Below are positions 2,357-61,118 of a DNA stretch of 64,000 nucleotides, one piece after another. Each line of letters opens with the position of its first letter. Position 1 is the first letter of the stretch. This DNA comes from Euprymna scolopes (Eukaryota), in NCBI GenBank assembly GCA_053919585.1, contig CM132792.1; one strand, 5' to 3'. The notes beneath the pieces were generated by a model. The model had not been told where the DNA came from and searched no databases. It was given only the letters and a program-made list of their open reading frames with translations. The position numbers and the translations under genes were made by a program.

Positions 2357-3344
2357 AACGTGGTTTAAAAAAAAAAGGTTTTACACTTTGGACTTTACAG
2401 GTAAATTAAAAAAAAAAACAATTCTTTTTTTTTGTTTTAAATTAGAATATTTTCTTTATTTGATCTTTTGTCTTCAATTTGTGATATATAAAACTTTGGT
2501 ACATAAATTAATTATTAAAATTTTAATAGACATTTCAAAATGGGGGTAGGTGAATAAAAAAAACAACCTTTGTCTAAAATATTATATTTAGTTTATTGGA
2601 AAGAGCATAAAATTTCATATTGACCCTGAAAATATCGTAAAAATTGAACCAATAGAAAAATTTTGATAGATTTTTAAGGTTTAAAAAGTGAAAAATATTT
2701 AACTCGTAAAATTCAATTCATTTCATTACGTAAAAAAAAAAAAAAAATGGCTGCATGACGGCGCGCCGGCATTTTGTAAAAACTGTTTTTTTTTAAATAA
2801 AAAAATAATATTTCTATTATTTTTTAAACAACTTTAATAGTTTATTTTGGAAGTATATTCCATACATAAAATAAACAACCCATTTTAAAAAGAGAAATTA
2901 CGAGTTCTTCTTATATTTTATTCGCACTTTTCTGTTAGGGGTGTCAAAAATTCCTCCAAATTTTTTATACACGACGCGCCGGCCAGTCGGCCACCTTGCT
3001 TATTTCGCGAACGAGGAGGTAATGCCTTTAAACGAAAAAGCGGTTAACAAAGGACAAAATGAAAAAGGGATTGAAGAAGAGCTTAGAACTTCTGTAAAAT
3101 AAGTGGGGGGGGGGGGGGAGGGGAAGAAAATTATCTACGTATTTTTTCTACCCAGGTTTCAAAATAATCTCGTCAAATTTTAACAAACTTTAAGCTATGA
3201 TGGAGTTATCTCCCATGGCGTCCTCCGCCTCATTCACGAAATAAACAAGATTGCCGCGACACGATCGATCTCATTGAACTTCGAATTTTCTCTATGAAAG
3301 AAACAAACTACTTGATTAAATTAAGTGAGTTTTTCTATGAAAAC

Positions 3345-3744
3345 TTTGGGTATTTTTTAGATTAGGTCCACCTCCACAATTTTCTTTTAAATGACAACTT
3401 TTACAGGTTTCGACTATGCTGAATACGAAAATTGAATTGAAATTTGGCAGAAATAATTAGTTACCGAGATATAAAAAGTTGTATTATGCATTGTATTTTT
3501 TGGCGGCCATCTTTTTTTACGCGCGTGCAGTGTCAGTCATAGATGAGTAGATTTGTTTATGGCGCGCGCACGTAAAAATGGCTGACAAAGAATGCAATGC
3601 ATAATACAACTTTTTATATCTCGATAACTACTTATTTCTGCAAAATTTCAATGCTATTTACATATTCAGCATAGTCGAAAACCTTTAAAAGTAGTCATTT
3701 AAAAGAAAATTGTTGAGGTGGACCTAATCTGAAAATTTACCAAA
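3345..3744. mobile_element. Fold-back MITE (about 400 bp), arms related to the TIRs of 61418-63453
   Basis: Left arm (AGATTAGGTCCACCTC...TTCGACTATGCTGAATA) is the reverse complement of the right arm (TATTCAGCATAGTCGAA...GAGGTGGACCTAATCT). Confidence 0.85.
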
Positions 3745-10900: not shown

Positions 10901-13900
10901 AATTAGACAAAACTAGTTTAACATTTTACGGCTATTTTGAGAGCCAACCCATTGAAGGCTTCATTGAAGGCTTCAATGTAACTAGTAAAACAAGTTTCCA
11001 TCTAAATGAATGAATGCAAAAGTTTTTGTTGTCCCCCCCCCCATCTGATTTGAGGTACTAGTGCAGTGATTCAACATAAAATTTTGAGGTACTAGTGCAG
11101 TGCCACGGATCAATAAGTGCACCACTGCACCACTGGTGCACTTATTGATCTGTGCTGAAATAATGTTATTTAAAAAGCCATTCTTAACACGGGGAGGGTG
11201 TTTTGTAACTATTCTATAATTTAACCTTACAATTGAATAAAAAGACATAAAACTTTAATTAAACTTGGAAATACGATTTAAAAAATAGCGCGGATCAGTA
11301 AGTGCACTAACACCAATTTGGAAATAGCGTCCCTTATGATATATCTGCAAACGGAAACGGCCATGAACAGCTTTAATTATTTCTAATTTGCATTTTTATT
11401 TTGAAAACCGTTCCTAATCTCGTTTTTATCAACATTTATATAGGGGAAAGTGGTCATAACGGAATTGCCCAGGATCATGGTGTTTTAGTAGGCGTTGCCC
11501 GGTAGCAATAAATCATTCATTATAAATGTAAGATTTCATGGCAGAATACGGATCGTGCTGAAATAACCGTTTTTTAAAAAGTCATTCTTAACATGAGGCT
11601 AGGATGTTTACTGTTTTATAACTAACAATTTAATAAGATGTCGTAAAAATTGAATTTAACTTGAAAATCTAAAAAAAAAAAAATTAAAAAAGGAAAAAAA
11701 GCACGGTCCGTATTCTCCAAAAGTACCCATATTAATATATTTGAAATTAAAATCTTCAGTAAATTTTCAAGTTTTTGAAGACAATTAGCGAAAATTGAGT
11801 TTATAGTTATCTCCCCTAGATAAAACCCGTCATTCAAACTAACGTCTTTTTTTTTTTGGGGGGGGGGGGTCTCTACTTTGATTCTCATATCATTCTCTCG
11901 TTCTATCCAGGTATTTAACTACTCCATTTTGTTATGAGTGGAAATATTTTCCGTTTTATTATCCTCTCGGTTATTACCTCTTTTTTTGGTTAGTGTTTCC
12001 TGTTTCGTTCATCCGTGCTGAAATAACGTTATTAACGTGGAGAGGGTGTTGAAAAAAATATATATCGGAAAAATTAAATTTAAATACATAACCATCTTAT
12101 TTTATTTGTTTTGAGAGAATGGAGATTGGAGATACTGTTGAAAAAGAAGAAAAAAAAAGGTGGCCTCTACTTCGGATTGTCGTTCAAATCATAGGTACAT
12201 TAAAAAAATTATTCACGCCGATATTTGTTACAAAAAGATTGTTATAAAATGCCTTCAAGGTGATTGTTGAAAGTGTCACGTCTGTCCACGTTCCAACAGT
12301 TCGTCAAGTTAAGTGACATTTGTTTTGAAAACAAAACTTTTCTTACTTTACAAGATAGCACTTATGAATTGACACGCGTTTCGTACTGACCTTTTTATTA
12401 TCTTCAGTTTTCACTTTGTACAAACTAACAATTGGACTTGCCTATAATCAAACTTTTTCTGATTTTTTAAATTTCTGAGGGAGGCTGCTGACAACAATTT
12501 ATATATATTAATAGGATAGTGTGTCTGTGTTATTTATTTTGTGTGTCACGCTTACATCTGAGTGACTGTCGTTTGTTATGGACTTCCATTTCTTATAATA
12601 AATAATTTTACCAAGAAGTCGTACCAAATCTTAGTTTCGGTTTCGATTATGACTGATGGCACTCTAGTAATTTTTTTTTTTTTTTGTACTTAGTGCACTT
12701 ATTGATCCGTGCTTAAATAATGTCATTATTTAAAAAGCCATTCTTAATAACATGGGGAGGGTGTTCTATACTTTAACCTTACAATTGAATAATAAAAAAA
12801 AATAAACTTTAATTAAACTTGGAAATACGATTTAAAAAATAGCGCGGATCAGTAAGTGCACTAGCACCCCCCTTTTTTTTCTTTTAATAAATAATTTTAT
12901 AAAGAATTCTTCAAAAGTTTTAATTCCGATCCAAGCTGATTTTTTTTATTACATTTTCACCCCAAACAAGGCAAATTGCCACTTTGGTGTAGGGGGCTAC
13001 TATCAGGGGCAACAACTACTGGGGTACTATGTAGGGATTTGGGCAGCAAGATGTCGGTTCACGTTACACTTGAACTTCTGCACGTCAGTACTGTTGGGGA
13101 AGCAGGGACCTGGAATGGAATTCCAGAGTCTAGCGGTTCTGGGGAAGAAACTATTGGAGTAAAAAGATCTTTTACATCTAGGGATCTCTACAGTGTGGGG
13201 GTGGGATTTAGCAGCCTGTCGGGTTTGTCAAGAGTGCTCACGTCGTGCGGGCACAAGTGATTGCAGTTCGTCAGAGCATTCACCACTAAAATACTTGTAG
13301 AAAAGGCAGAGGGATGCAACATTTCGTCGATGGGACAGAGGCTGAAGCTTAGATGCCAGTTCAGGGCCTATCAGGTTTGCGACTCTCTTTTGAACCTTGT
13401 CAAGCAGCGAGAGACTAGTAGCCGATGCACCAGCCCAGATGTGGCAGCAATACGCCATACATGGGCGAATGGTGGCCTTATAGAGGTACATGATACTTTC
13501 GGGTGTTAGTAGTTATCTAGCACGATAGAGAGAGCCCACCTTTCTTGCAGTGGCATTGGCAATGCCTTCAATGTAATTGTTCCAACTCATGTTTCCTGTG
13601 AACGTTAGGCCAAAGAGTTTGAAAGATTTTCCGATTTTTTTTAAATCGCAACTTTATAATATACTAGCGGGGGTACACGGCGTTGCCCGGGTGTTTGGAG
13701 GTGTGTATGTAGGAGAGTGTGACCCTGTTTTAATTTTAAAAGTTTTAATATAAAAAAAAAACACTGTTAAAAAAAAAATTTGGAAAAAAGAAAAAAAAAA
13801 AAGGTGTAAAAGAGGAAAAAAAGTTTAGGTGAGAAGACGGCTTAAACCCGAAGCATCGAGGCTAAGGCGAAAAAAAGCCTGACACGTTACCCCTACGCCA

Positions 13901-16900
13901 AAAAGACATGCAATTGAGAACGGATAAAATTAAACCTTTAAAAACACTTGCAGGTGGTTTAAACTAGGTCAAACATGACGTCATTGTCGTAGTAGCAGGA
14001 GGAGAGAAAATGAAGGAACGATTTTTTTTGGCACCCCTCCTCGTAGAAAAGGGTCCAGTTTAGGGTGAAGGAATTAATGTTTTTGGCCAATTTTTCGATA
14101 TTTGTCGTCCAAGATGTCGGGCTTAAATGATACCAATCTCGTGAAAATCTGTCGCCTCTATCGAAAGTTTTTGCGAGACATGCAAACACGCATACATACA
14201 TACATGCACACATTTTCGCTTATATATATACTAGCGGGGGGTACCCGGCATTGCCCGGATGTTTGGAGGTGTGTGGTTTTGGGTAAATCAAAACTCGGGG
14301 GGGGGGGGGGGTAAAATTTTAAAAGTTTTGGTAGAAGTATGAGGATCGAACCCGAACCCTTGAGGCAAAGTTGGAAATTAAAGTGTGAAAAAAAAAAAGT
14401 GTGACGTTAACCATTGGGCCCCCGTGAAATACTAACGGAAACACGTTTGAATTTATTTAACTGTTTAGAATTGGCAGGTGCATGTTTTAATGACTTAATG
14501 AGGTCTACTTTGACTGCGGGGTAGTATTTCATTTACTGCGGGAACGCTTTTTTTAATTTTTATTTTCCCAAGATGTTGGGGGGGGGCAGCTCCCCATAAA
14601 AAAGGGATTGTCCAAATTGAATAGCAATATAAGGAAAATATTTCCACATTGATCAAATCTGATTGCTTTCAAACATTTCCGGCGATCGCAACCAGAAAAA
14701 AATACCACCAGAATTAGTGTCGCTTTTATTATACAAAAAAGCCTAATCCACATGCGGCGAGCGAAAATGTTGAATATTTATCTTTTCGAAGTCGAGCAAA
14801 TTAAATAGACAGGCGACCTCCATTGTTAACTCATAGATATTATAATTTATATGTGATATAAAAAGTTTTAAGAAGTTGTGAGCCTACTGACCGCTTCTCA
14901 GAAAAAAAGCCTTTCTTGGACATGCACAAAAAGCGAACATACATACACACATTTTCGCTTTTATATATATAGACTAGCGGGGGGGGGGTAGCCGGCGTTG
15001 CCCGGGTGTTTGGAGGTGTGTTTGTGTGGTCACCCGGGTGTTTGTGTCGGGGGGGGGGGGGTGTTAAAATAAAAAAGTTTTGGTAGATAAGTATGAAGGA
15101 TCAAACTCGAATCCTTGAGGCAAAGTTGGAAATTAAAGTGTGAAAAACGTGCAACGTTAACCATTGGGCCACCACAAAGTACTAACAGAAACACGTTTGA
15201 ATTTAAGTACTAGTGGGGGGTATCCGGCGTGGCTCGGGTGTTTGTAGGTGTGTGTGTGTGTTGGGGGGGGTGATCAAAACAACCCTGTTTTTAAAATAAA
15301 AACGTTGGCCGAGTGTTTGTAGGTGTAAAAGAAAAAAGTTTTAGTAGGAAAGTGGGCTTGAACCCCAAACCTTTGACGTGGAGGTGAAAACGAAATGGAA
15401 AAAAAACCCTGGGACCTAACCATCTCAGCCATGAGAGAAGAGGAATGAAAAGCATCTTAATTTAGCGTTTATAAAATGAAATTAACAGGTGCGATAAACT
15501 TAAGATGACGCGACTGCAAGCCAGTTTTTGCTTGCTTTATACTGAAAAGCGAAAGAAACATGTGATCGAAGTATCTGGAAAAAATAGCGCGTGAAAGTCG
15601 GACAAATTAAATACACACGCAATCCTCGTTCTTAAGTCATTTAGACGTGATATAAAAAGTGTTAAGAAGCGAGCCGAGTAAGAAGGCCGACAAAAAAAAG
15701 CCTTTTGCAGACATACACAAAAAGCGAACATACATACATACACACATTTTCGCTTTTATATCTATATATATATATATATATATAGATTTAGAATTGGGAG
15801 GTCCCCCGTTTTAATGACTTAATGAGGTCAACTTTGACTGCGAGGTAGCATTTTATTTACTGCGGGAACGCTTTTTTTATTTTTATCCCCCCCCCCCCCC
15901 CCAAAGATGTTTGGGGGGAAAACCAGTTCCCCATAACAAGGGTATTGTCCAAATTGAATAGCAATTGTCTGATATAAGGAGAAACTCCACATTGATCAAA
16001 GCTGATTGCTTTTGGACGTTCACGGTGATCGCACCGGGAACGATGTCTTAAGCTCCGTTTCGCTTTTATTATTATACGAAAAAGCTTAATACACATGCGG
16101 CGAACGAAAATTGTTGAATATTTATCTTTTCAAAGTCAGGCAAATTAAATAGACAGGCGACCCTGGTTGTTAGCTCGTAGATATTGTCATTTAGGCGCGA
16201 TATAAAAAACTTTAAGAAGTTGTGAGACGACCGATCGGTTCTCAGAAAGGAGCCTTCCTTGGACATACATGAAAACGCACACACACACATTTTCGCTTTT
16301 ATATTTATAGATAGAAGATAAAAATCGATAGAACATTAACTATAATAATATATACAAAATCTGCTAGAATTAAAATTAAAATATATTTAAGCTTACTTTA
16401 CGACCATGCTGCTTTGGGTGTTCGTGCTAGCTTAGATAAATACTTTTGCAGTTTTAACAAAAGAGCTACAATAATATCAGAGCGTCTCCATTTACGCTGA
16501 GCATTTACAGAATGCCAACATTAATATATTACACGAGTCCTCTGTGGGATTTCCACAGATCCCGCTAGTTTTTATTAAGAACAGACTCTAAATTTATTTG
16601 TAGCTATTAGGAAATAACGTAGGGTTTGTATTACTCGAAAAAGTTGTCAAAAAACAAATATATAACAAATGTTATCAAAGGCAAGATAAATTACTTTTCT
16701 ACCTAACTGGATGTTTTTTGTATTGAATGTATTCAGCTCGAAAAAGTGTTTACTGATGTATTGGAAAATTTAAAATGGCGCTCGACTTTCTCTTTGACAC
16801 GGTAAGTTTGGGAAAAGGAGTTTAAAAGAACCCCAAAAAAACTAGACAGAATACTGTTAAAAAACCCACCGAATATATGTTAGCCCATGTCACAGTAACA

Positions 16901-19900
16901 TATATTGAGCGAGTTTTTAACAGTATTTTGTATATTTTTTTATTTTTAACTCCTTTTCCCAAACTTACTGTGTCAGAGAGAGTCGGGCGCCATTTTTAAC
17001 TTTCCAATACATCAGTAAACACTGTATGTTTTTCAAGCTGAATAAACATGTTACATTAAATAACAACACTAAACACATATCCAGTTAGGTAGAAAAGTAA
17101 CGTATCTTGCCTTTGATAACATTTGCTATATATTTGTTTTTGGACAATTTTTTTCGAATCTGTACAGTAATACAAACCCAATAACGTATAGTCCATATGG
17201 CAAAACGCAGCAAAAACGCTTGTATTGTCCTAAATGCTTCTTATTTGTCCCTATCCGTAGAATTTGGTTTCAAGACACATTTGTGCCATTTTCGAAATGT
17301 TATAACTATCTGTGAATATCTAGCAATTACTTGTCCGACAGGTTTTGACTAGGCTTTGCAAGACAATTTTTCCCCCGCATGGAATATGGGTTCCTAGTGT
17401 TCGCTGGAATTGGCACAATCTTCTTAGACTCTCAGGTGTCTACGATGTTGTGCCACTATACTACATGTTCCCAGATGCAACCCTGTTCCCTTTGGAGTAT
17501 ATGATCTGCTTGGATTAAATCTGCTGTCTACCCATCAGAATGTAACAGTTGCTTCTGTTGCCTACAGATTATTTCATGGTTCTTGCCCCACTGCAATGCT
17601 TAAATATCATCCTGTGCTGTGACTGAACAGACCAAACCTACAATATACATTCACATTAGACCCACTGCATAATCACACTGGTATTTGCTAAGAGATTTAC
17701 CGGCAATCTCCTTTCGCATTGTGTTCAGCAGTCCTGAACCTGCTGCCTCAGGATTGTGTGAATGAATATGCATCATTGTCACATTTTCAGAGTTCTGTAT
17801 TGTCTAACTATCGTGATGTTAAGTTTTATGCATTCCCTAATTAGCTTAGTAGCCTTTATCTATTGCTAACAGTTTTTTATGACCATGGCTTAATAAAAAG
17901 AAAAAAAACATTACTTGCCTCACCACAAAAGTAGTTAGGCAGAAGGTCGGTTTTTGATCCTTAACCAAATTAGTTATGGTGGTACTTATGCAGCAGCTTT
18001 AGTTCTCTGGAACATCTTGCGCACAGACAGCATGTCAACAAAGCTCGTCAATCTTCTGAAAGCATGCTACGACTCCACCTGCGCCAAAGTACACTGTTAT
18101 GGTTCATTCGACATGCTCTTTGGAGTTAAACAAGCTTGTGTTCTCTCGCCTATCTTGCTTAATTATGCCATGGACTGGATCATTGACCATGCATCCGCAA
18201 ATTTCCTGCTTGTCGAAGTTGGCTGAAATTTCTCTCTTACCTTCCTGGTCTTTGCTGATCACATTGCCATATTGGGGGAGAGCTTCGAAGACCTACACGT
18301 AGCAGTTGACGGCATGCATGCTTATGCCTCCCAAGTGGGCATGAAGATAAACGCGTCAAAGACGAAGATACTTTTCGCTGACTTCGTTCCATCCCCCCCC
18401 CAAAATGCCAATTTCCCTAAACAGTATTATCATTGAAGAAGTCTAACGCAACACTTCAAGTATCTGAGATCGATATTCTTTGCCACTGGTGGAGGGTCAT
18501 TGTTTGCATCAAATTTACTTTGGTAGCACAATTAGTTACCAAATTATGACCATTTAAAGTTTGTTGGAAATTAGAAAATTTGTTGTTTTGTTTACTTTTG
18601 GTGCAAAAGTCAATTTTTACAATGTATAACTAAAAATGTTTAGAATTAGTGTAAAAATGTTATGTCATCTTGTAGTAAATGACAATTGATCATAATGGAA
18701 GCAAATTAAATCCAAGCTAGCCTAAAATCCCGCCTCTTAAAAAAAAAATATCTATATATATATATATATCTCGTATAATTAATGCAGAAGCATAAATCTG
18801 AATATTTATATAAAACTAATGGGACCTGTGGAAATTCCACAGCGGCATCTTTAATATGTAATATATTGCTGCTGGGCATACTGTGGATGTTCAGCTTGAA
18901 TGGAGACCCTTTCGTTAAAACTGTAAAGGTATTTATCTTAGTAATCTGGTTAATGTAGTGTCAGAATATATTTGTTTATTACGATTTATCTTCAGTATCC
19001 TTATAGAGGTTTGTGACATTTCCATTGTATAGACGCCCGACATGAATGGAAACTCAGCAAAATCAATATCATCTATAGACAAGATGCTACCCTTGTCTTC
19101 TATCAAGAAGACATATTTTAGTTTTATGTGTGGCCCAAAAACTGTATCTTTTAAAAAAATTTTTTATTTTACATTGCGTCTTTGGTGATCGAGAGATCCT
19201 ATTTATTAGAAAGGAGGATACGAACATCAAATTAGTGTCTCGGTATACTAATTGAATATTCGTAATGTGATCACCTATCCTCCTTTTTAATAAATAGTAT
19301 CTCCCGATCGAATAAGTTATAATCTGGAAACTGACACGCGTGCATACGTTAATGGTACTATGGTATTATATATATTCATTTCAACAGTTAACACCTGGAA
19401 TCTCTAATTATTCATAGCACAATAGAAATCAAAATAGATTTTTCTTTTAAATTATAAATCAGTCCAAACCAGAAAGGTTGGTTTATGTAAAAAATTAAAA
19501 AATCTGATTTGCTAAGATTTTTTGTCAAAAGCTAGCCAAAACCAAATATAAATAAAGCAGCATCAACAAATAGGATAAATACATTTTAAACAAACTTTTG
19601 TAATGCACATTTAATATAATTGAGTTATTAATTTATATCTATACAAGCAATAATGTTTTGATAATAAAGACTAATTCCAGAGCGAATTAAAAATTGTCTT
19701 TTTTTTTTTTTAATCCGTATCTGTGCTTACATAGTTCTGGTTTAATTTAGGAAATTTGGATAGTTTTGTGTTTTCTTGGTTTTCGTAACAATTAAACCTT
19801 GCACCAACCTGACCTCTACAACAATTCTTCTACTAGTGAGGATTTTATTCTTGATAAGATTAGAATTGTTTTTAAGGTAAAATCTTTGATAATAATTTCT

Positions 19901-32800: not shown

Positions 32801-35800
32801 TAGGATGTGAATAGTCATGACAATCCATGCTTGAGAAGGATTCTTATAATTATTAAAAGAAAGAAGCTTAATCTTAGTAGCATTAAATGTTATCATGCAT
32901 TTACGCCCCATTCGACTACATCAGCAAATATACCCGTTTCTAACACAATTTCATTCAGGAGGTCATTTATGGATATTCGGAATAAAGATTGATCTCTGAA
33001 GCACTCCTGAATTAATATAATATTTGGATTACGTTCATTAAAACAACCTGGGTGTTTTCTTGTCTCAGAAGCATCTGATCATATTTAGCATTCGTCCAGT
33101 AATATTGTATTAAAATTACAGAAAGATATCCTCAAAAATGAATCTATTTAAGTTCAAAATCCTTCAGTGACCTTTTGGACACCCTGTATACATAATGTTG
33201 GCTTGAATGAGTAAGGCTTTGATTTATTAAAAAATCCAAAACCGCTAACTTAATACGTAAAACTAAAAACTAGTGATACCATATGTCTTCAAATGTCTAA
33301 TGGGAAAATATATTACGGGTCACTTGTCCTCCTCCTCCTCACAGCTCGATTTACAACATCTAATAGCACATGGCATCCTCAAAAAATGATTTTAGCAATA
33401 AATTGATAAAAATACACTACCATCCTTGCTGTCTCAAATTGCAATCTGCACCCTCGTCCCCCCATTGTCAAAACTTTACTCATATTAGCAAACAATTTTA
33501 CCCTCAACCAAGTTTGATAAAAGGAAAGTGTATACTAAAATGATTTTGAAAGCATTTTAATTGATTTTTTTTTTTTTTTTTTTTAAATTCCCAGCCAATA
33601 ATAATGCAATTGTTACTAATTGCAATTTTTTTTTTTAATGACTTAAAGTTTTGGAAGTGCATTTAAATGACATTAGTTTCATCTATAATAGAAATCTCAC
33701 CTGTCTGTTTAAATGTGTGTTTGTATGTTTGCCTAAAACTTTCAACATAAGCGATGGATTTTCACGATCAGTATCATTTTGAAGCTCAACCCTTCGTACG
33801 ACAAATATCAAAAAATTGGCCAAAAAACATTAATTCCTTCACCCCTGAACTGGGCACTTTCCTACAGGGAGCGGGTAACAAAAATTTATTCATTTATTGA
33901 TTGTTCCTTTGAAAATTTAGCCAAACACGCTTGTGGCAAAAGATTTTTCTTGAATTAGTTTAAATATAAAAAAAAAAAAACGACTTAACTTTCCTCATGC
34001 GATCATAGACCAGTTGTTATAGTGGCAGCGTTATCTTAAGATTGCATGTTCGAACCAAGATATCAGATAAATTTTTGTTTTCAATTTTTAAAGTTTTAAT
34101 ATTGAAACGGGGTTATGCCATTTTTTTTTCGTTCATTTTTTTCCAGTTTTTCCATCACGTTTGCTGCTTTTCTTTTTGTTCCGATTTTTCTTTCTTTCTT
34201 TTTTTTTTTTTAAAAGAAGTTTTAACATTTAAACAGTTATTTATGCCATTTCTTTTTTTGTTCACTTATTTATTTTGCATCACATTTGCTATTTTTTTTT
34301 TTTTTCTGATTAAAAACAAAAAAGTTATATTTAACCAGGGATTATGTCCACTTATTCTTTGTTTTCCATTTTGTTTTGATTTACCCCCCCCCCCCCACCT
34401 CACCACACTCGGGCAATGCCGGGTATCCCCACTAGTTTTAACCATAAACAAATAGAGGCATATTTAACTATAAACAAATAATAGAGGCATATTTCACTGT
34501 TAATAAATATTATGCACTAAAGGTTATATATACAAAGTATTCAATCAATAAATGGATAACTAAAACAAATTTTTTTAAAGGATTTTTGAGATGAGGATTT
34601 TGATTACTTGGCCTACTGTTCTTGTCTTTAAGGTTATTCTCAACATTTTGTCCGCTGTAACATCACTTTTCAAACGTGTCTTGAACTGAGGAGTCCGTAA
34701 TGACCCGTGGTGCAACAGATATAAATGCTAATAATCAATTTTAAGTAACCTGGTGGTCGGATGTTCAGTTCTCGTAATTACGAATTGACTTCTGCATGAT
34801 GGAACGAGAACAAGCTAGTCCGTGGATTAAAGGATTTGGTTTAAAGTCCTAAAAGATGCCCAAGTGCAACAAGATGTACCTGAAGAAGGTCAGAGGTTAC
34901 ATCAACTGAAACGTTGTGAATAACGATGGAAGATAAGAACAGTAGTCCGAATAATTCAAATAATAATTTTAACTTTGATTCCCCCCCCCTCCCCCAAAGC
35001 AGCTTACTTAAAAAAAAACAAAAAAACTTTTTAGTGTGTATTTAAATTAAATCCACTAGAATGTATTCCTGTTTGTGGTAGAATGTTTCAAAAAGATTTG
35101 CTTTAAAATAAAAGGCAACAAATGTGAGGGTGGGGATGTCTAAAAAGCCAGTTTTAACAATAATTTATGATAGTATTTCTTATTTTGGTTTATTTCAATA
35201 CATATGTACAATGACCTTTTTAACTAAAGCCAAATCATTTTAAATGCACTCAAAACTTATTTTTCTCCAAGGGTGCTTATATTTTCTATGCAAGGATTTT
35301 CGTTTTAAAATTGCTGCTTTGAAGAGGGGGGGGGAATTATCAACTCGCTTTGTTATTAGAATATCAAATTTACATTCTTCATTAATTTGTATAGGTAGAA
35401 AGCATTTTATGTGCATGCTAAATTTAGCAGGTGAATCTTTAGATTTAAAAATGTTTTTTAAATTAGTGACATTTGTTTCAAGAAAAGCAAGTAAAATAGT
35501 TTTATTTAATAGTTTTTGCAAGTAAAATGTTACTGTATTTCTGAATTTTTATTTTCGTGTCTTAAAACTCCGAATAATTTTGATTGATCTGATAAAAAAA
35601 AAAATCACTCTTTATTTTTACTGGAGCTAAAAGTGTTTTCAAATTTATATCAAAGTATATGGCGGCTAAACATGCACTCATTAATTAAAAATTATGCAAA
35701 ATGCAACAGCAAAAATGACTTTCAAAATCTTTTTATTCTAAAAAATATTAAGAACTTTCAAGTTGTAAGTCAGTCATTTAAGCTGGCATGAGCTGATCAT

Positions 35801-58675: not shown

Positions 58676-61118
58676 CTAGCAGAGAGACCCGATGTTGCCC
58701 GGGATTGAATGATGATCAACAAATATTTCACATTCCTATATATTTATTATCATCAAAATCTGTGAAATCGCCCGGGAGGAAGCGGCACATGCCTTCATGC
58801 AGTAAAATATGTTATGCTACATTGCACTCTAAAGAACCTACTGTTTCTTTTATAACATTACTAGCATGGGTACCCAGCATTGCCTGGGTTGACATGAAGT
58901 TCCGTTTGAAATAGACCTGTATACTTATCATTTTCATCATGGGTAATGTGGATACCCCCACAACAAAACTAAAAGAACGGATCAAAATATGTAAATGTAA
59001 TCGCCCCCAAAAAGAAGTGTGATACCCTCTCCACCAGATATTTCGGCAGAAGGGCTACAAAGAGAAGAAACTATTCTCCGGATATTGAGCACTGGGAAGA
59101 CCCCCCCCCCCCAAGTAATTAAAAATAAATCATTGCAACTTTTATTTCAATAAAAATAGCAGCGAATGCCCGTGTGATTGCAAAAAATAACGAACAAAAA
59201 AAAAAAAAAATATTCCAAAAACAATTAAATGAAATTTTTCGTCATTTTATATTTCTAATGTAATCCCACCCCTCCCAATTGTATTTGTCATATTTTGGGG
59301 TTCGTTCAGTTTTATAAAATTGTTAGGTGAAAGTACAGAATGTTCTTATATAAAATAATAAAATTTATCGTTATTTTATGTTTTAAATGTAATTCCCACT
59401 CCTCCCCACCAAAAAACCCCCCCGAAATTGTATGTCATATTTTGCCCCCCCCCCCTCTCGCCAAACTTGGAAAATGCTAGAGATGACATGTCTCGTTGAA
59501 CGCTTTGTGGCCCAAAAGTGGGTGCTCATTTTGCATTAAATTTATATAGAAAAGTGATTCCCCACGCTAAAATGTTAATTTTTTTTTTTTTTTTTTTTTT
59601 TCCAAATTTTTTCTTTCATATTATTTATAAAGACTGTTTAAACGTATTAGGTCCCCCCAAAATAGGTCTTAATTTTTTTTTATAGGGGTTAAACGACGTT
59701 GGGTTGCGTCGTAAAAATTAACCATTTTTAATTTAAGATATTAAATAAATTATAAAGAAAATCTGTTTTGCAGGCAATTAAACACACTTGCTATGGTATA
59801 ATTATTATAATAAAATCCTGAGCAACACCGATTACATTTTATAAACAAACAAAGGAGCAGATAATGTATGGGATGATGGATTTTGCTCGCATGGAAAATT
59901 GGCCCTGTGGTTTGACTAACTCTGCCCTCGTGGGGATGCAAGTAAATGAGCACATTAGTTTTAATTATTTTTCTTGAACAAATAAAAAGGTTACTTAAAA
60001 ATTAAGAATAAGCAAAAAAAAAAAAAAAAAAATTCCTCCGAATTAAAAATAAAAATAATGATTCAGCTTAGAAGAATATTTCGAAATGAAAACAAATCTA
60101 TTACAGAAAATATTTAATAACGTGCTCCGTTTAAAACAATTTTTCAATTAAATTATCACAGTTATCTCTCCTTTGGTTTTCTGGTTTGAAAATTAAATGG
60201 TTTCAGATTTCAGATAAAATAAGTTAAATCAAATATAAATTGAAATTTAAATGAACTAAATAATTAAGGTTTTTTTAATTAGTACAGTTGAAACGAAGCT
60301 ATTATGTCGAATAAGTAATAGCATCGAGCTAATTATTTAAATAGGTTTAATTTAATGTAATATGCTAATGACCCTAACTCAATGCATGTAGATGTGGTTT
60401 GAAGAATGATATATATAGAAATTACGTATAAAATATAATGTCTCCTTTGACAAAAGTATCTTATCATGGGCATTAATATTTCTTGACCAGGAGAGTTGTA
60501 CACACATATGGCCTTTATATTTCTTTGATCATTGGGAGTTGTACACAGACAAGCACACACACACGAACGCTAGTACTTTATATATATATATAGATTTTAT
60601 ATAAACTTTCCAGTTAACAAGAAAAAAAAAAATTCAGAAATTTACGTGCCGGGTTTGAACCTTCAGACCACGTCACGCAAAAAAAAAAAAAAAAAAAAAA
60701 AAACGTAAATTTTGAAGTCTTATAAAATTCTTTGCAGTTAATGAAAAAAGATTAAGAAATTTACGTGCAGAATTTGAACATACAGACCACGTCATGCAGA
60801 ACCCTAACCTCTCAAATCACAAAAAACAAACGAACAGAAAAACACGCTATCAACTTACCAACAGAAGAATTTTCACGGCCCGTTGTTCTATCATTGTTGC
60901 TAAGCGACAGCATGGAAAAAATGGCTTTACTGATGATAAATTAAAATAATGGTTTCGATTATCGGGGGTATTCTGAGACACAACTTAACTAAGATCACTT
61001 CCAGATTTATACATCTGTAAATTTTAAAGAAAATCTGTTCAGCCGTTTCGGAGTTTATAGAGAACAAACACACACACACACACACAAAGTTTCATTTATA
61101 TAATTGTAAAGATAGAGA
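58676..61118 (-). mobile_element. Non-autonomous Helitron with a second Helitron (58861-60594) nested inside
   Basis: CTAG plus hairpin ends at 58676 and 58861; (CA)n tracts with AT-rich ..AGA ends at 60594 and about 61118; inner element sits at A|T. Confidence 0.7.

What the first reader, a model, noticed from the sequence alone, without database searches (positions are those of the whole stretch)
13815..15495. Divergent Helitrons each carry a co-oriented tRNA-gene-like Pol III cassette
Seen, on the minus (Helitron-sense) strand: all four units have an A-box-like motif (TGGCGTAGGGG from 13900; GGGCCCAATGG from 14421; TGGCCCAATGG from 15171; TGGCTGAGATGG from 15431) and a B-box-like motif (GGTTTAAGCC 13848-13839; GGTTCGATCC 14352-14343; AGTTTGATCC 15107-15098; GGTTCAAGCC 15364-15355). 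An AAACTTTT terminator-like run follows roughly 15-20 nt later. Units 1, 2 and 4 also have an AT-rich/TATA-like block about 30-45 nt and CACCTG about 51-55 nt upstream of the A box. Apart from the near-identical units 2 and 3, the sequence between motifs is hard to align, so the architecture is better conserved than the sequence. Each also has a T-run in the anticodon-equivalent position. Known: type-2 Pol III promoters use A/B boxes and T-runs, and Helitrons capture host and SINE DNA. Inference: this may be a Helitron lineage that maintains a Pol III/TFIIIC module, either for a short (about 35-40 nt, tRNA-half-like) RNA or as a chromatin-opening/insulator element, rather than passive cargo.
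Basis: partly seen in the sequence, partly recalled or inferred. Interest (0 to 1): 0.72.

Follow-up and report, generated by a model that had tools for sequence, protein, structure and literature searches.

The report
Helitron family with inherited tRNA-derived module
Four rolling-circle transposons (Helitrons) in a large mollusc genome each carry the same decayed tRNA-derived segment with RNA polymerase III promoter-like signals. The segment is inherited by descent across a very abundant Helitron lineage, and nothing yet shows that it is bound or transcribed.

Summary
All motifs are at the stated coordinates. They belong to one homologous ~100-nt module, not to four look-alikes.

- **Locus:** four non-autonomous Helitrons of three families.
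- **Abundance:** each family gave about 3,000 candidate copies, a lower bound. The module lies upstream of 53 of 74 untargeted Helitron 3' ends. All 61 hits are in Helitron sense.
- **Not a tRNA gene:** ARAGORN and Rfam find none. The T stem is not kept, and a T8-11 run replaces the anticodon loop.
- **Conservation:** across 14 divergent modules the best conserved windows are the B box and the following terminator. The A box is below average. Within families the boxes decay like everything else.
- **Lineage specificity:** Helitrons with the same 3' hairpin in other organisms' contigs lack the module.
- **Expression:** the only RNA data are polyA-selected and cannot address Pol III.

Best reading: one ancient capture, kept at lineage level, perhaps as a TFIIIC site. 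That function is inferred, not shown. The scan noted the same feature on many other windows of this genome, and one follow-up reached a similar verdict.

The parts
13664..14230 (-). Helitron D, non-autonomous, family U1 (567 bp). Its 5' end lacks the first few bases of the family consensus because Helitron C inserted into its (TA)n leader.
   Evidence: 87% identity to the U1 consensus over its full length. 3' hairpin plus CTAG at 13664-13667. The family gave 3,024 first-look candidates.
13816..13900 (-). tRNA-derived module of D: A-box-like 13890-13900, T7 13870-13876, B-box-like 13839-13848 (this copy is mutated to GGTTTAAGCC; the family consensus is GGTTCGAGCC), terminator T7 13816-13822.
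   Evidence: (nhmmer E 3.8e-11)
14231..14973 (-). Helitron C, non-autonomous, family U2 (743 bp), complete from TC to CTAG.
   Evidence: 93% identity to the U2 consensus positions 1-758. The family gave 2,906 first-look candidates.
14321..14425 (-). Module of C: A-box-like 14411-14421, T11 14388-14398, B-box-like GGTTCGATCC 14343-14352, terminator decayed to T4 at 14321-14324.
   Evidence: (E 2.9e-21)
14974..15209 (-). 3' part of Helitron A, an older copy of family U2.
   Evidence: U2 consensus positions 527-752 at 82% identity
15071..15175 (-). Module of A: A-box-like 15161-15171, T5 15143-15147, B-box-like 15098-15107 (mutated to AGTTTGATCC), terminator T6 15071-15076.
   Evidence: (E 1.1e-20)
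15210..15786 (-). Helitron B, non-autonomous, family U4 (577 bp). It is nested in Helitron A, inserted between an A and a T with no target-site duplication.
   Evidence: 87% identity to the U4 consensus positions 3-601. Junctions were read directly. The family gave 3,368 first-look candidates.
15332..15433 (-). Module of B: A-box-like 15420-15431, T8 15399-15406, B-box-like GGTTCAAGCC 15355-15364, terminator T6 15332-15337. It is followed at about 15303-15326 by a partial internal copy of the 3' terminus.
   Evidence: D6; E 7.5e-20
15787..16311 (-). 5' part of Helitron A (family U2). It starts with TC after a host A.
   Evidence: U2 consensus positions 1-519 at 82% identity
13951..13956 (-). 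CACCTG motif 56-60 nt upstream of the A box. Further copies lie at 14475-14480 and 15486-15491. It is preceded in D by a TGACGTCA palindrome at 13976-13983 and followed by an AT-rich TTAAWTWAA-type block.
   Evidence: (11 of 35 elements carry it at -48 to -55; shuffling predicts 0.75)
13664..13710 (-). Helitron 3' terminus: CACACCTCCAAACA, a GC hairpin, then CTAG. The same terminus occurs at 14231-14278, 14974-15025 and 15210-15257.
   Evidence: (D4)
34004..34060 (+). Decayed tRNA-like piece of a second type, about 375-430 nt upstream of another Helitron 3' end at 34435 (+) and co-oriented with it.
   Evidence: It resembles the L071/L073/L035 type. The module profile did not detect it.

Best explanation
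SHOWN
- The region holds four non-autonomous Helitrons of three related families. Each carries one homologous ~100-nt module that descends from a single ancient capture of a tRNA, probably a class II, long-variable-arm type, or of a tRNA-derived SINE head.
- The module sits 75-190 nt before the 3' terminal hairpin, always in Helitron sense. It has been passed on by descent as the lineage split into many families with different bodies.
- It is no longer a tRNA gene. There is no cloverleaf, and a T8-11 run stands where the anticodon loop was.
- Individual copies decay neutrally.

INFERRED (about 40-45% likely)
- Master copies of the lineage keep a near-canonical B box and the T-run after it because TFIIIC binds there.
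- The module would then act as an extra-TFIIIC-type or tDNA-like site that keeps source copies in open, unsilenced chromatin.
- At most it would produce an abortive transcript of about 30-40 nt that stops at the first T-run.
- The useful product would be the protein-DNA complex, not an RNA.
For: Helitron identity:
- 5' TC, 3' CTAG, a GC hairpin about 11 nt before the end, and insertion between A and T without a target-site duplication, seen in about 75 aligned copies and in the nested insertion.

Homology and inheritance:
- The module is part of all three family consensus sequences.
- A module profile hits 53 of 74 untargeted Helitron 3' ends, with 61 of 61 hits in sense.
- There are 185 hits in 349.5 kb. 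Nearly all are followed by a Helitron terminus.

Lineage-level constraint:
- Fourteen non-redundant modules share 67% mean pairwise identity. Among them the most conserved 10-nt window is GGTTCGAGCC (0.879) and the next is AAAACTTTTT (0.857), against a mean of 0.703.
- Consensus-level B boxes differ only at the degenerate positions R57 and N59.
- The module is shared with 16-23 of 51 other-family elements. The adjacent spacer is shared with 3-11 and the upstream 100 nt with 4-6.

Fit to how TFIIIC works:
- High-affinity B-box binding anchors TFIIIC while A boxes are low affinity (PMC11811891). That matches a conserved B box and a loose A box.

The module is not needed for transposition through this terminus:
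- 99 Helitron ends with the same hairpin in other organisms' contigs lack it. The profile gave 0 hits in 480 kb, and B-box plus T-run occurred once in 99.
Against: - There are no binding or transcription data. PolyA RNA-seq shows no read starts or ends and no peak over the modules, and most reads are antisense to the Helitron.
- Within families the boxes are no better kept than the rest: 0.96-0.97 against 0.95-0.96 at non-CpG columns.
- The B box matches 10 of 11 consensus positions. The mismatch is at C62, a base that human TFIIIC contacts (PMC11811891).
- Conservation could reflect hitch-hiking with the nearby required terminus. It could also reflect better alignability of a GC-rich island within T-rich low-complexity sequence.
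Confidence: 0.5

Rival explanations
1. Passive cargo. The tRNA-derived piece was captured once and has no function. It persists only because it lies close to the 3' terminus that every daughter family must keep, and because the families are fairly young.
For: - Copies decay neutrally within families.
- No tRNA structure is kept.
- The A box is below the module's average conservation.
- A strong internal T-run would abort Pol III.
- The B box matches 10 of 11 positions.
- Module-less Helitrons with a similar hairpin also exist in this window, at 58676, 58861 and 63181.
Against: - The B box and the terminator are the two top-ranked windows of 95.
- The spacer between the module and the terminus lies closer to the required end, yet it is shared by fewer families than the module.
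- Consensus-level B-box changes fall only at degenerate positions.
Confidence: 0.4
2. Active Pol III mini-gene. TFIIIC and TFIIIB start transcription about 10-15 nt before the A box, and Pol III stops at the first T-run. This would give an RNA of about 30-40 nt, like a tRNA 5' half, with a function of its own. The B box lies downstream of the terminator, as in the yeast U6 gene SNR6 (that arrangement is from my own knowledge).
For: - An AT-rich TATA-like block lies 28-43 nt before the A box in all family groups.
- A/B spacing is 55-69 nt.
- A T-run is conserved after the A box in every family.
Against: - The segment that would be transcribed, the A-box region, is the least conserved part of the module at 0.62.
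- No sense-strand read pile or read ends were seen, although polyA libraries would miss such an RNA.
Confidence: 0.1
3. A cis-acting part of the Helitron itself, such as an extended termination or recognition signal for the Rep/helicase, or a DNA hairpin on the single-stranded intermediate.
For: It lies near the 3' hairpin, and a possible AGGCT...AGCCT stem encloses the B box.
Against: - Its distance to the end varies from 75 to about 400 nt.
- The stem is paired in 75% of cells, close to shifted controls (up to 63%), with no clean covariation.
- Helitrons with the same hairpin in other organisms lack the module.
- In Helraiser the 3' hairpin alone acts as the terminator (PMC4778049).
Confidence: 0.05
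4. Independent SINE or tRNA insertions into each Helitron, or a chance resemblance to A and B boxes.
For: None beyond the motif resemblance.
Against: - The module is present at the same position in every family consensus and in about 25 aligned copies per family.
- 61 of 61 hits are in sense.
- Shuffling predicts 0.9 occurrences against 46 observed.
- The modules of different families are homologous to each other.
Confidence: 0.01

Closest known systems
Helitron capture of host sequence (maize and bat Helitrons; Helraiser model, PMC4778049)
   Same: A non-autonomous rolling-circle element carries a piece of host origin between its termini. A 3' hairpin acts as the terminator. A partial internal copy of the terminus beside the module in family U4 looks like a relic of end bypass.
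   Different: The cargo is a tRNA-derived Pol III-type promoter module. It has been kept across a whole radiation of families while the bodies were exchanged, rather than being a family-specific gene fragment. I found no paper describing this.
tRNA-derived SINE heads (type 2 Pol III promoters)
   Same: A decayed tRNA with an A box, a B box and T-runs, in which only the promoter-like primary sequence is kept and not the cloverleaf.
   Different: - There is no LINE-derived tail, no A tail and no target-site duplications of its own.
- It moves as DNA inside a Helitron.
- A T8-11 run between the boxes would stop Pol III after about 30 nt.
Extra-TFIIIC (ETC) sites, tDNA insulators and TFIIIC-bound Alu elements (PMC7014570, PMC12409998)
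   Same: A B-box-centred site where binding rather than the transcript is what matters. Repeats spread such sites through a genome.
   Different: Binding is untested here. The carrier is a DNA transposon in a mollusc. The B box matches 10 of 11 positions.
Yeast U6 gene SNR6 (my own knowledge, not checked here)
   Same: The order is TATA-like block, A box, terminator, then a B box downstream of the terminator.
   Different: There is no evidence of any RNA product, and no homology.

Membership tests
Helitron (canonical, non-autonomous) | 5' TC and 3' CTRR termini | tested here: met
   About 75 aligned copies begin with TCTATATATATAAAAGCG and end with CTAG.
Helitron (canonical, non-autonomous) | GC-rich palindrome or hairpin about 10-12 nt before the 3' end | tested here: met
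   CCCGGGCAACGCCGGG followed by TACCCCCCG and CTAG.
Helitron (canonical, non-autonomous) | Insertion between host A and T without a target-site duplication | tested here: met
   The flanks of aligned copies. The nested insertion of B into A was compared with the U2 consensus as the empty site.
Helitron (canonical, non-autonomous) | A Rep/helicase-encoding autonomous partner with the same termini | tested here: inconclusive
   PF05970 gives 11,406 candidates, many with 1,579-aa open frames. Their DNA could not be fetched, so the termini were not compared.
tRNA gene | Cloverleaf recognised by tRNA finders | tested here: not met
   ARAGORN finds 0 in the window and 0 in 349.5 kb. There is no RF00005 hit at E<=10 in the region or in 20 loci. 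The T stem is paired in 43% of cells.
tRNA gene | Anticodon stem-loop | tested here: not met
   It is replaced by a T5-T11 run in every family.
Type 2 Pol III transcription unit | A box, B box 30-90 nt apart, T>=4 terminator downstream | tested here: met
   Start-to-start spacing is 55, 69 and 66 nt. The B box matches 10 of 11 positions. A T-run follows 15-20 nt after it. This is sequence evidence only.
Type 2 Pol III transcription unit | TFIIIC or Pol III occupancy and a discrete transcript | not testable with these tools
   Only polyA or oligo-dT RNA runs were offered. No read starts or ends were seen.
SINE | Own target-site duplications, a LINE-derived or A-rich tail, free-standing copies | tested here: not met
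   Modules lie inside Helitron consensus sequences. Nearly all of the 185 hits are followed by a Helitron terminus. There is one possible free copy, at L073:452-540.

The most novel reading that the evidence does not exclude
A Helitron radiation has kept a tRNA-derived TFIIIC/Pol III module as part of its own equipment and has used it to scatter on the order of 10^5 B-box sites through a 5.9-Gb mollusc genome. These sites would be bound by TFIIIC. They would keep source Helitrons accessible and, as a by-product, would act as architectural or insulator sites for the host, the DNA-transposon counterpart of TFIIIC-bound SINEs.
Probability: 0.2. Interest if true: 0.8.

Novelty: new variant of a known kind. 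Interest (0 to 1): 0.5.

Why it matters
Helitrons are known to pick up host DNA. A Pol III-type promoter module that is retained while a lineage diversifies into many families is not described in the papers I could search.

If TFIIIC binds these sites, a DNA transposon would be spreading tDNA-like chromatin elements on a very large scale in a genome noted for its size and rearrangement. That gives a concrete, testable link between transposon success, Pol III factors and genome architecture.

If the module is inert, the finding is simply a well-characterised marker of one Helitron lineage. It would still be useful for annotation and for separating these elements from SINEs and tRNA pseudogenes.

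Tried and rejected
- **tRNA finders:** ARAGORN and Rfam at a permissive threshold, on the region and on 20 loci, found no tRNA. The only Rfam hits were chance miRNA-like matches to the (TG/TA)n Helitron leader.
- **RNA evidence:** only polyA or oligo-dT libraries were offered. Reads laid at >=86% identity gave no discrete starts or ends. The strand bias towards Helitron-antisense RNA is best explained by encoded A-runs in antisense transcripts. The 10x loose ends run straight into A-runs.
- **Other collections:** a 27-nt terminus pattern found nothing in metagenome or viral contigs. A shorter hairpin pattern then served as an outgroup control.
- **B-box strand count:** counting the B box on both strands with one mismatch was misleading because the motif is nearly palindromic. 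I replaced it with strand-specific 7-mers and the B-box plus T-run pattern.
- **Alternative hairpin:** a possible stem around the B box was not supported by covariation.
- **Parent tRNA:** the D-arm-like GTGGCCGAG.GGTTA and the 55-nt A/B spacing in family U1 suggest a class II tRNA (Ser or Leu). This rests on memory and was not tested against this genome's tRNAs.
- **Literature:** four searches found no description of a Helitron-borne tRNA-derived module.
Full report
**1. Observation**

- A-box-like motifs start at 13900, 14421, 15171 and 15431.
- B-box-like motifs lie at 13848-13839, 14352-14343, 15107-15098 and 15364-15355.
- A T-run (T7, T11, T5, T8) lies between the boxes.
- AAAC plus a T-run follows 15-20 nt after each B box. 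Unit 2's copy has decayed to T4.
- CACCTG lies 56-60 nt before the A box in units 1, 2 and 4.

**2. Anatomy of the locus**

The region is a cluster of four non-autonomous Helitrons, all in minus-strand sense.

| Helitron | Family | Window coordinates | Note |
|---|---|---|---|
| D | U1 | 13664-14230 | 5' end trimmed by the insertion of C |
| C | U2 | 14231-14973 | complete |
| A | U2 | 14974-15209 and 15787-16311 | older copy, split in two |
| B | U4 | 15210-15786 | nested in A |

Helitron A matches U2 consensus positions 527-752 and 1-519 at 82% identity. The U2 consensus serves as the empty site for the nested insertion. B went in between an A and a T with no target-site duplication.

Alignments of about 25 full-length copies per family give sharp ends:
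- 5' TCTATATATATAAAAGCG.
- 3' a GC hairpin, then CTAG followed by a host T.

Many copies directly abut other Helitron ends or (TA)n tracts. The TA-rich 5' leader of one Helitron is therefore a preferred target for the next, which explains the head-to-tail arrangement.

**3. Abundance**

Each of the three families gave 2,906-3,368 first-look candidates in the 5.9-Gb assembly. These are lower bounds. The best 40 matches per family were 81-92% identical and mostly full length.

**4. One homologous module, inherited by descent**

The module is part of all three family consensus sequences. When the consensus sequences are aligned, four parts align:
- the 5' leader;
- a short stretch around CACCTG;
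- the module;
- the 3' terminus.

The bodies do not align.

I located 165 Helitron 3' ends in the window and 87 fetched loci (349.5 kb). Of these, 74 were not the targets of my searches and had 450 nt of upstream sequence.
- A profile built from the three consensus modules hit 53 of the 74. All 61 hits were in Helitron sense.
- B-box plus T-run occurs in sense in 46 and in antisense in 1. Shuffling predicts 0.9.
- The 349.5 kb holds 185 module hits. The 'orphans' I inspected are nearly all followed by a variant Helitron terminus within 50-200 nt. One possible free-standing copy lies at L073:452-540.
- At least one further, more distant tRNA-like type exists. It lies about 300-400 nt before the end in other families, and a decayed example is at 34004-34060 (+) in this window.

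Independent SINE insertion and chance are excluded.

**5. Not a tRNA gene**

- ARAGORN finds nothing in the window or in 349.5 kb.
- Rfam at E<=10 gives no tRNA hit in the region or in 20 loci chosen for the best-looking modules.
- The canonical T stem is paired in only 43% of cells. An alternative hairpin around the B box is not supported by covariation.
- The anticodon loop is replaced by a T-run in every family.

What survives is primary sequence:
- a D-arm-like TGGC..A..GGT;
- a B box matching 10 of 11 consensus positions, with the last C replaced by T;
- an acceptor-like CCTACYAAAAC followed by a T-run.

Start-to-start A/B spacing is 55-69 nt.

**6. Conservation**

Within families the non-CpG columns of the boxes are 0.96-0.97 identical to the consensus. 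The rest of the element is 0.95-0.96, and CpG columns are 0.83. Individual copies therefore decay neutrally, with CpG hypermutability.

Between families I compared 14 non-redundant modules with a mean pairwise identity of 0.67.
- The single most conserved 10-nt window of 95 is GGTTCGAGCC, at 0.879.
- The next independent peak is AAAACTTTTT, at 0.857.
- The module mean is 0.703.
- The A-box window is 0.62, below the mean.

Family-level B boxes are GGTTCGAGCC (twice), GGTTCGATCC and GGTTCAAGCC. They differ only at the two degenerate positions of the B-box consensus.

Each family's module matches 16-23 of 51 other-family elements. Its neighbours match fewer: the spacer towards the terminus 3-11 and the upstream 100 nt 4-6. 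The terminus itself matches 31-40.

The pattern of a strong B box and a loose A box is what the TFIIIC mechanism predicts. High-affinity B-box binding anchors the factor, which then scans for low-affinity A boxes (PMC11811891).

Caveats:
- The GC-rich B box is easier to align than the T-rich surroundings.
- The mismatch at C62 affects a base that human TFIIIC contacts.

**7. Outgroup control**

The same hairpin plus CTAGT occurs in more than 120 metagenome contigs from other organisms. Those Helitron-type ends have different upstream sequence.
- The module profile gives 0 hits in 480 kb.
- B-box plus T-run is found in 1 of 99.

Three further Helitron ends in this window, at 58676, 58861 and 63181, also lack the module. 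The module is therefore an acquisition of one lineage in this genome, not a requirement of the terminus. This argues against a role as a transposition signal. It agrees with the Helraiser result that the 3' hairpin itself is the terminator (PMC4778049).

**8. RNA**

Only polyA or oligo-dT libraries were available. I laid reads at >=86% identity to pool family members.
- They show Helitron sequence on both strands, 3-5 times more (up to 44 times over B's module) in the orientation I infer to be Helitron-antisense RNA.
- No places were found where molecules begin or end.
- There is no peak over the modules.
- Loose ends of the oligo-dT single-cell run go straight into A-runs. The bias is therefore explained by genomically encoded A-runs in antisense read-through transcripts.

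These data cannot detect a short non-adenylated Pol III product. They say nothing for or against it.

**9. Interpretation**

Origin and inheritance are well supported: one ancient capture of a tRNA or tRNA-derived SINE head, kept by descent in a very successful Helitron lineage. The spacing in family U1 and the D-arm motif suggest a class II tRNA, but that rests on memory.

Function is open. I lean slightly (about 40-45%) to lineage-level maintenance of a TFIIIC-binding site that keeps master copies accessible. The reason is that the B box and its terminator, not the would-be transcript, carry the conservation.

Pure hitch-hiking cargo is almost as likely (about 40%). An active 30-40-nt mini-gene is less likely (about 10%), because its sequence is the least conserved part.

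**10. Novelty and context**

Helitron capture of host DNA is well known. SINE-borne and tDNA-like TFIIIC sites are known (PMC7014570, PMC12409998). I found no report of a Helitron lineage that retains a tRNA-derived Pol III-type module.

The scan's first readers flagged the same feature on at least eight other pieces of this genome. One follow-up (s1-279924) reached a similar verdict.

- inheritance by descent, with its statistics;
- the conservation contrast between the B box and the A box;
- the neutral decay within families;
- the outgroup control;
- the nested structure of the locus.

**11. Limits**

'Large mollusc, probably a decapodiform cephalopod' is an inference from the 5.9-Gb size, the numbering of the large contigs up to at least 46, and the run labels.
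- Consensus sequences were built only for short non-coding, non-autonomous transposons and are not reproduced here.

Noticed in passing
window 16622-17179: A ~560-bp nested near-perfect inverted repeat (arms up to 82 nt, about 90% complementary) lies immediately upstream of Helitron A. It looks like a foldback or MITE-like element.
   Followed up: no
L023 (Helitron 3' end at about 2844, + strand): A tandem array of at least six ~68-nt units. Each unit joins a partial Helitron terminus (AAACAACCAGGCAAC) to the B-box half of the module and a T-run. It is a satellite-like amplification inside a Helitron.
   Followed up: partly
window 15303-15326 and the U4 family consensus: A partial internal copy of the 3' terminus (ACACCTNCAAACAC.CGGCCAACG plus a T-run) sits right after the module's terminator. 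It is probably a relic of end bypass or terminus replacement.
   Followed up: partly
metagenome loci L091-L170 (mostly contigs named Ga0268261_...): The same Helitron hairpin plus CTAGT occurs in over 120 contigs of other, unidentified organisms, with quite different upstream sequence. The terminus is widely shared, either by old ancestry or by horizontal transfer.
   Followed up: partly
G000 genome-wide: There are 11,406 PIF1-helicase candidates. Dozens have identical scores and 1,579-aa open frames. This suggests many recent, possibly active autonomous Helitrons.
   Followed up: no
window 13500-13640 (-): The end of a reverse-transcriptase-like reading frame (non-LTR retrotransposon fragment) abuts the 3' side of Helitron D.
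   Followed up: no
window 58676, 58861 (-) and 63181 (+): Three further Helitron-type 3' ends with a related hairpin (CCCAGGCAATGCTGGGTACCCATGCTAGT and variants) but no module. They belong to module-less Helitron lineages that coexist in this genome.
   Followed up: partly
family alignments U1, U2, U4: CpG columns are 0.83 identical to the consensus against 0.95 for other columns. This strong CpG decay suggests these elements are, or were, methylated.
   Followed up: no
L073:452-540 (-): A module-like sequence with a better anticodon-stem-like hairpin and no Helitron terminus downstream. It may be a free-standing relative, a SINE or a tRNA pseudogene, of the captured module.
   Followed up: no
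window 13976-13983 and the upstream regions of many families: A TGACGTCA or TGACCTCATTAA motif precedes CACCTG by about 20-40 nt in several families. It is a second conserved upstream block of unknown meaning.
   Followed up: no
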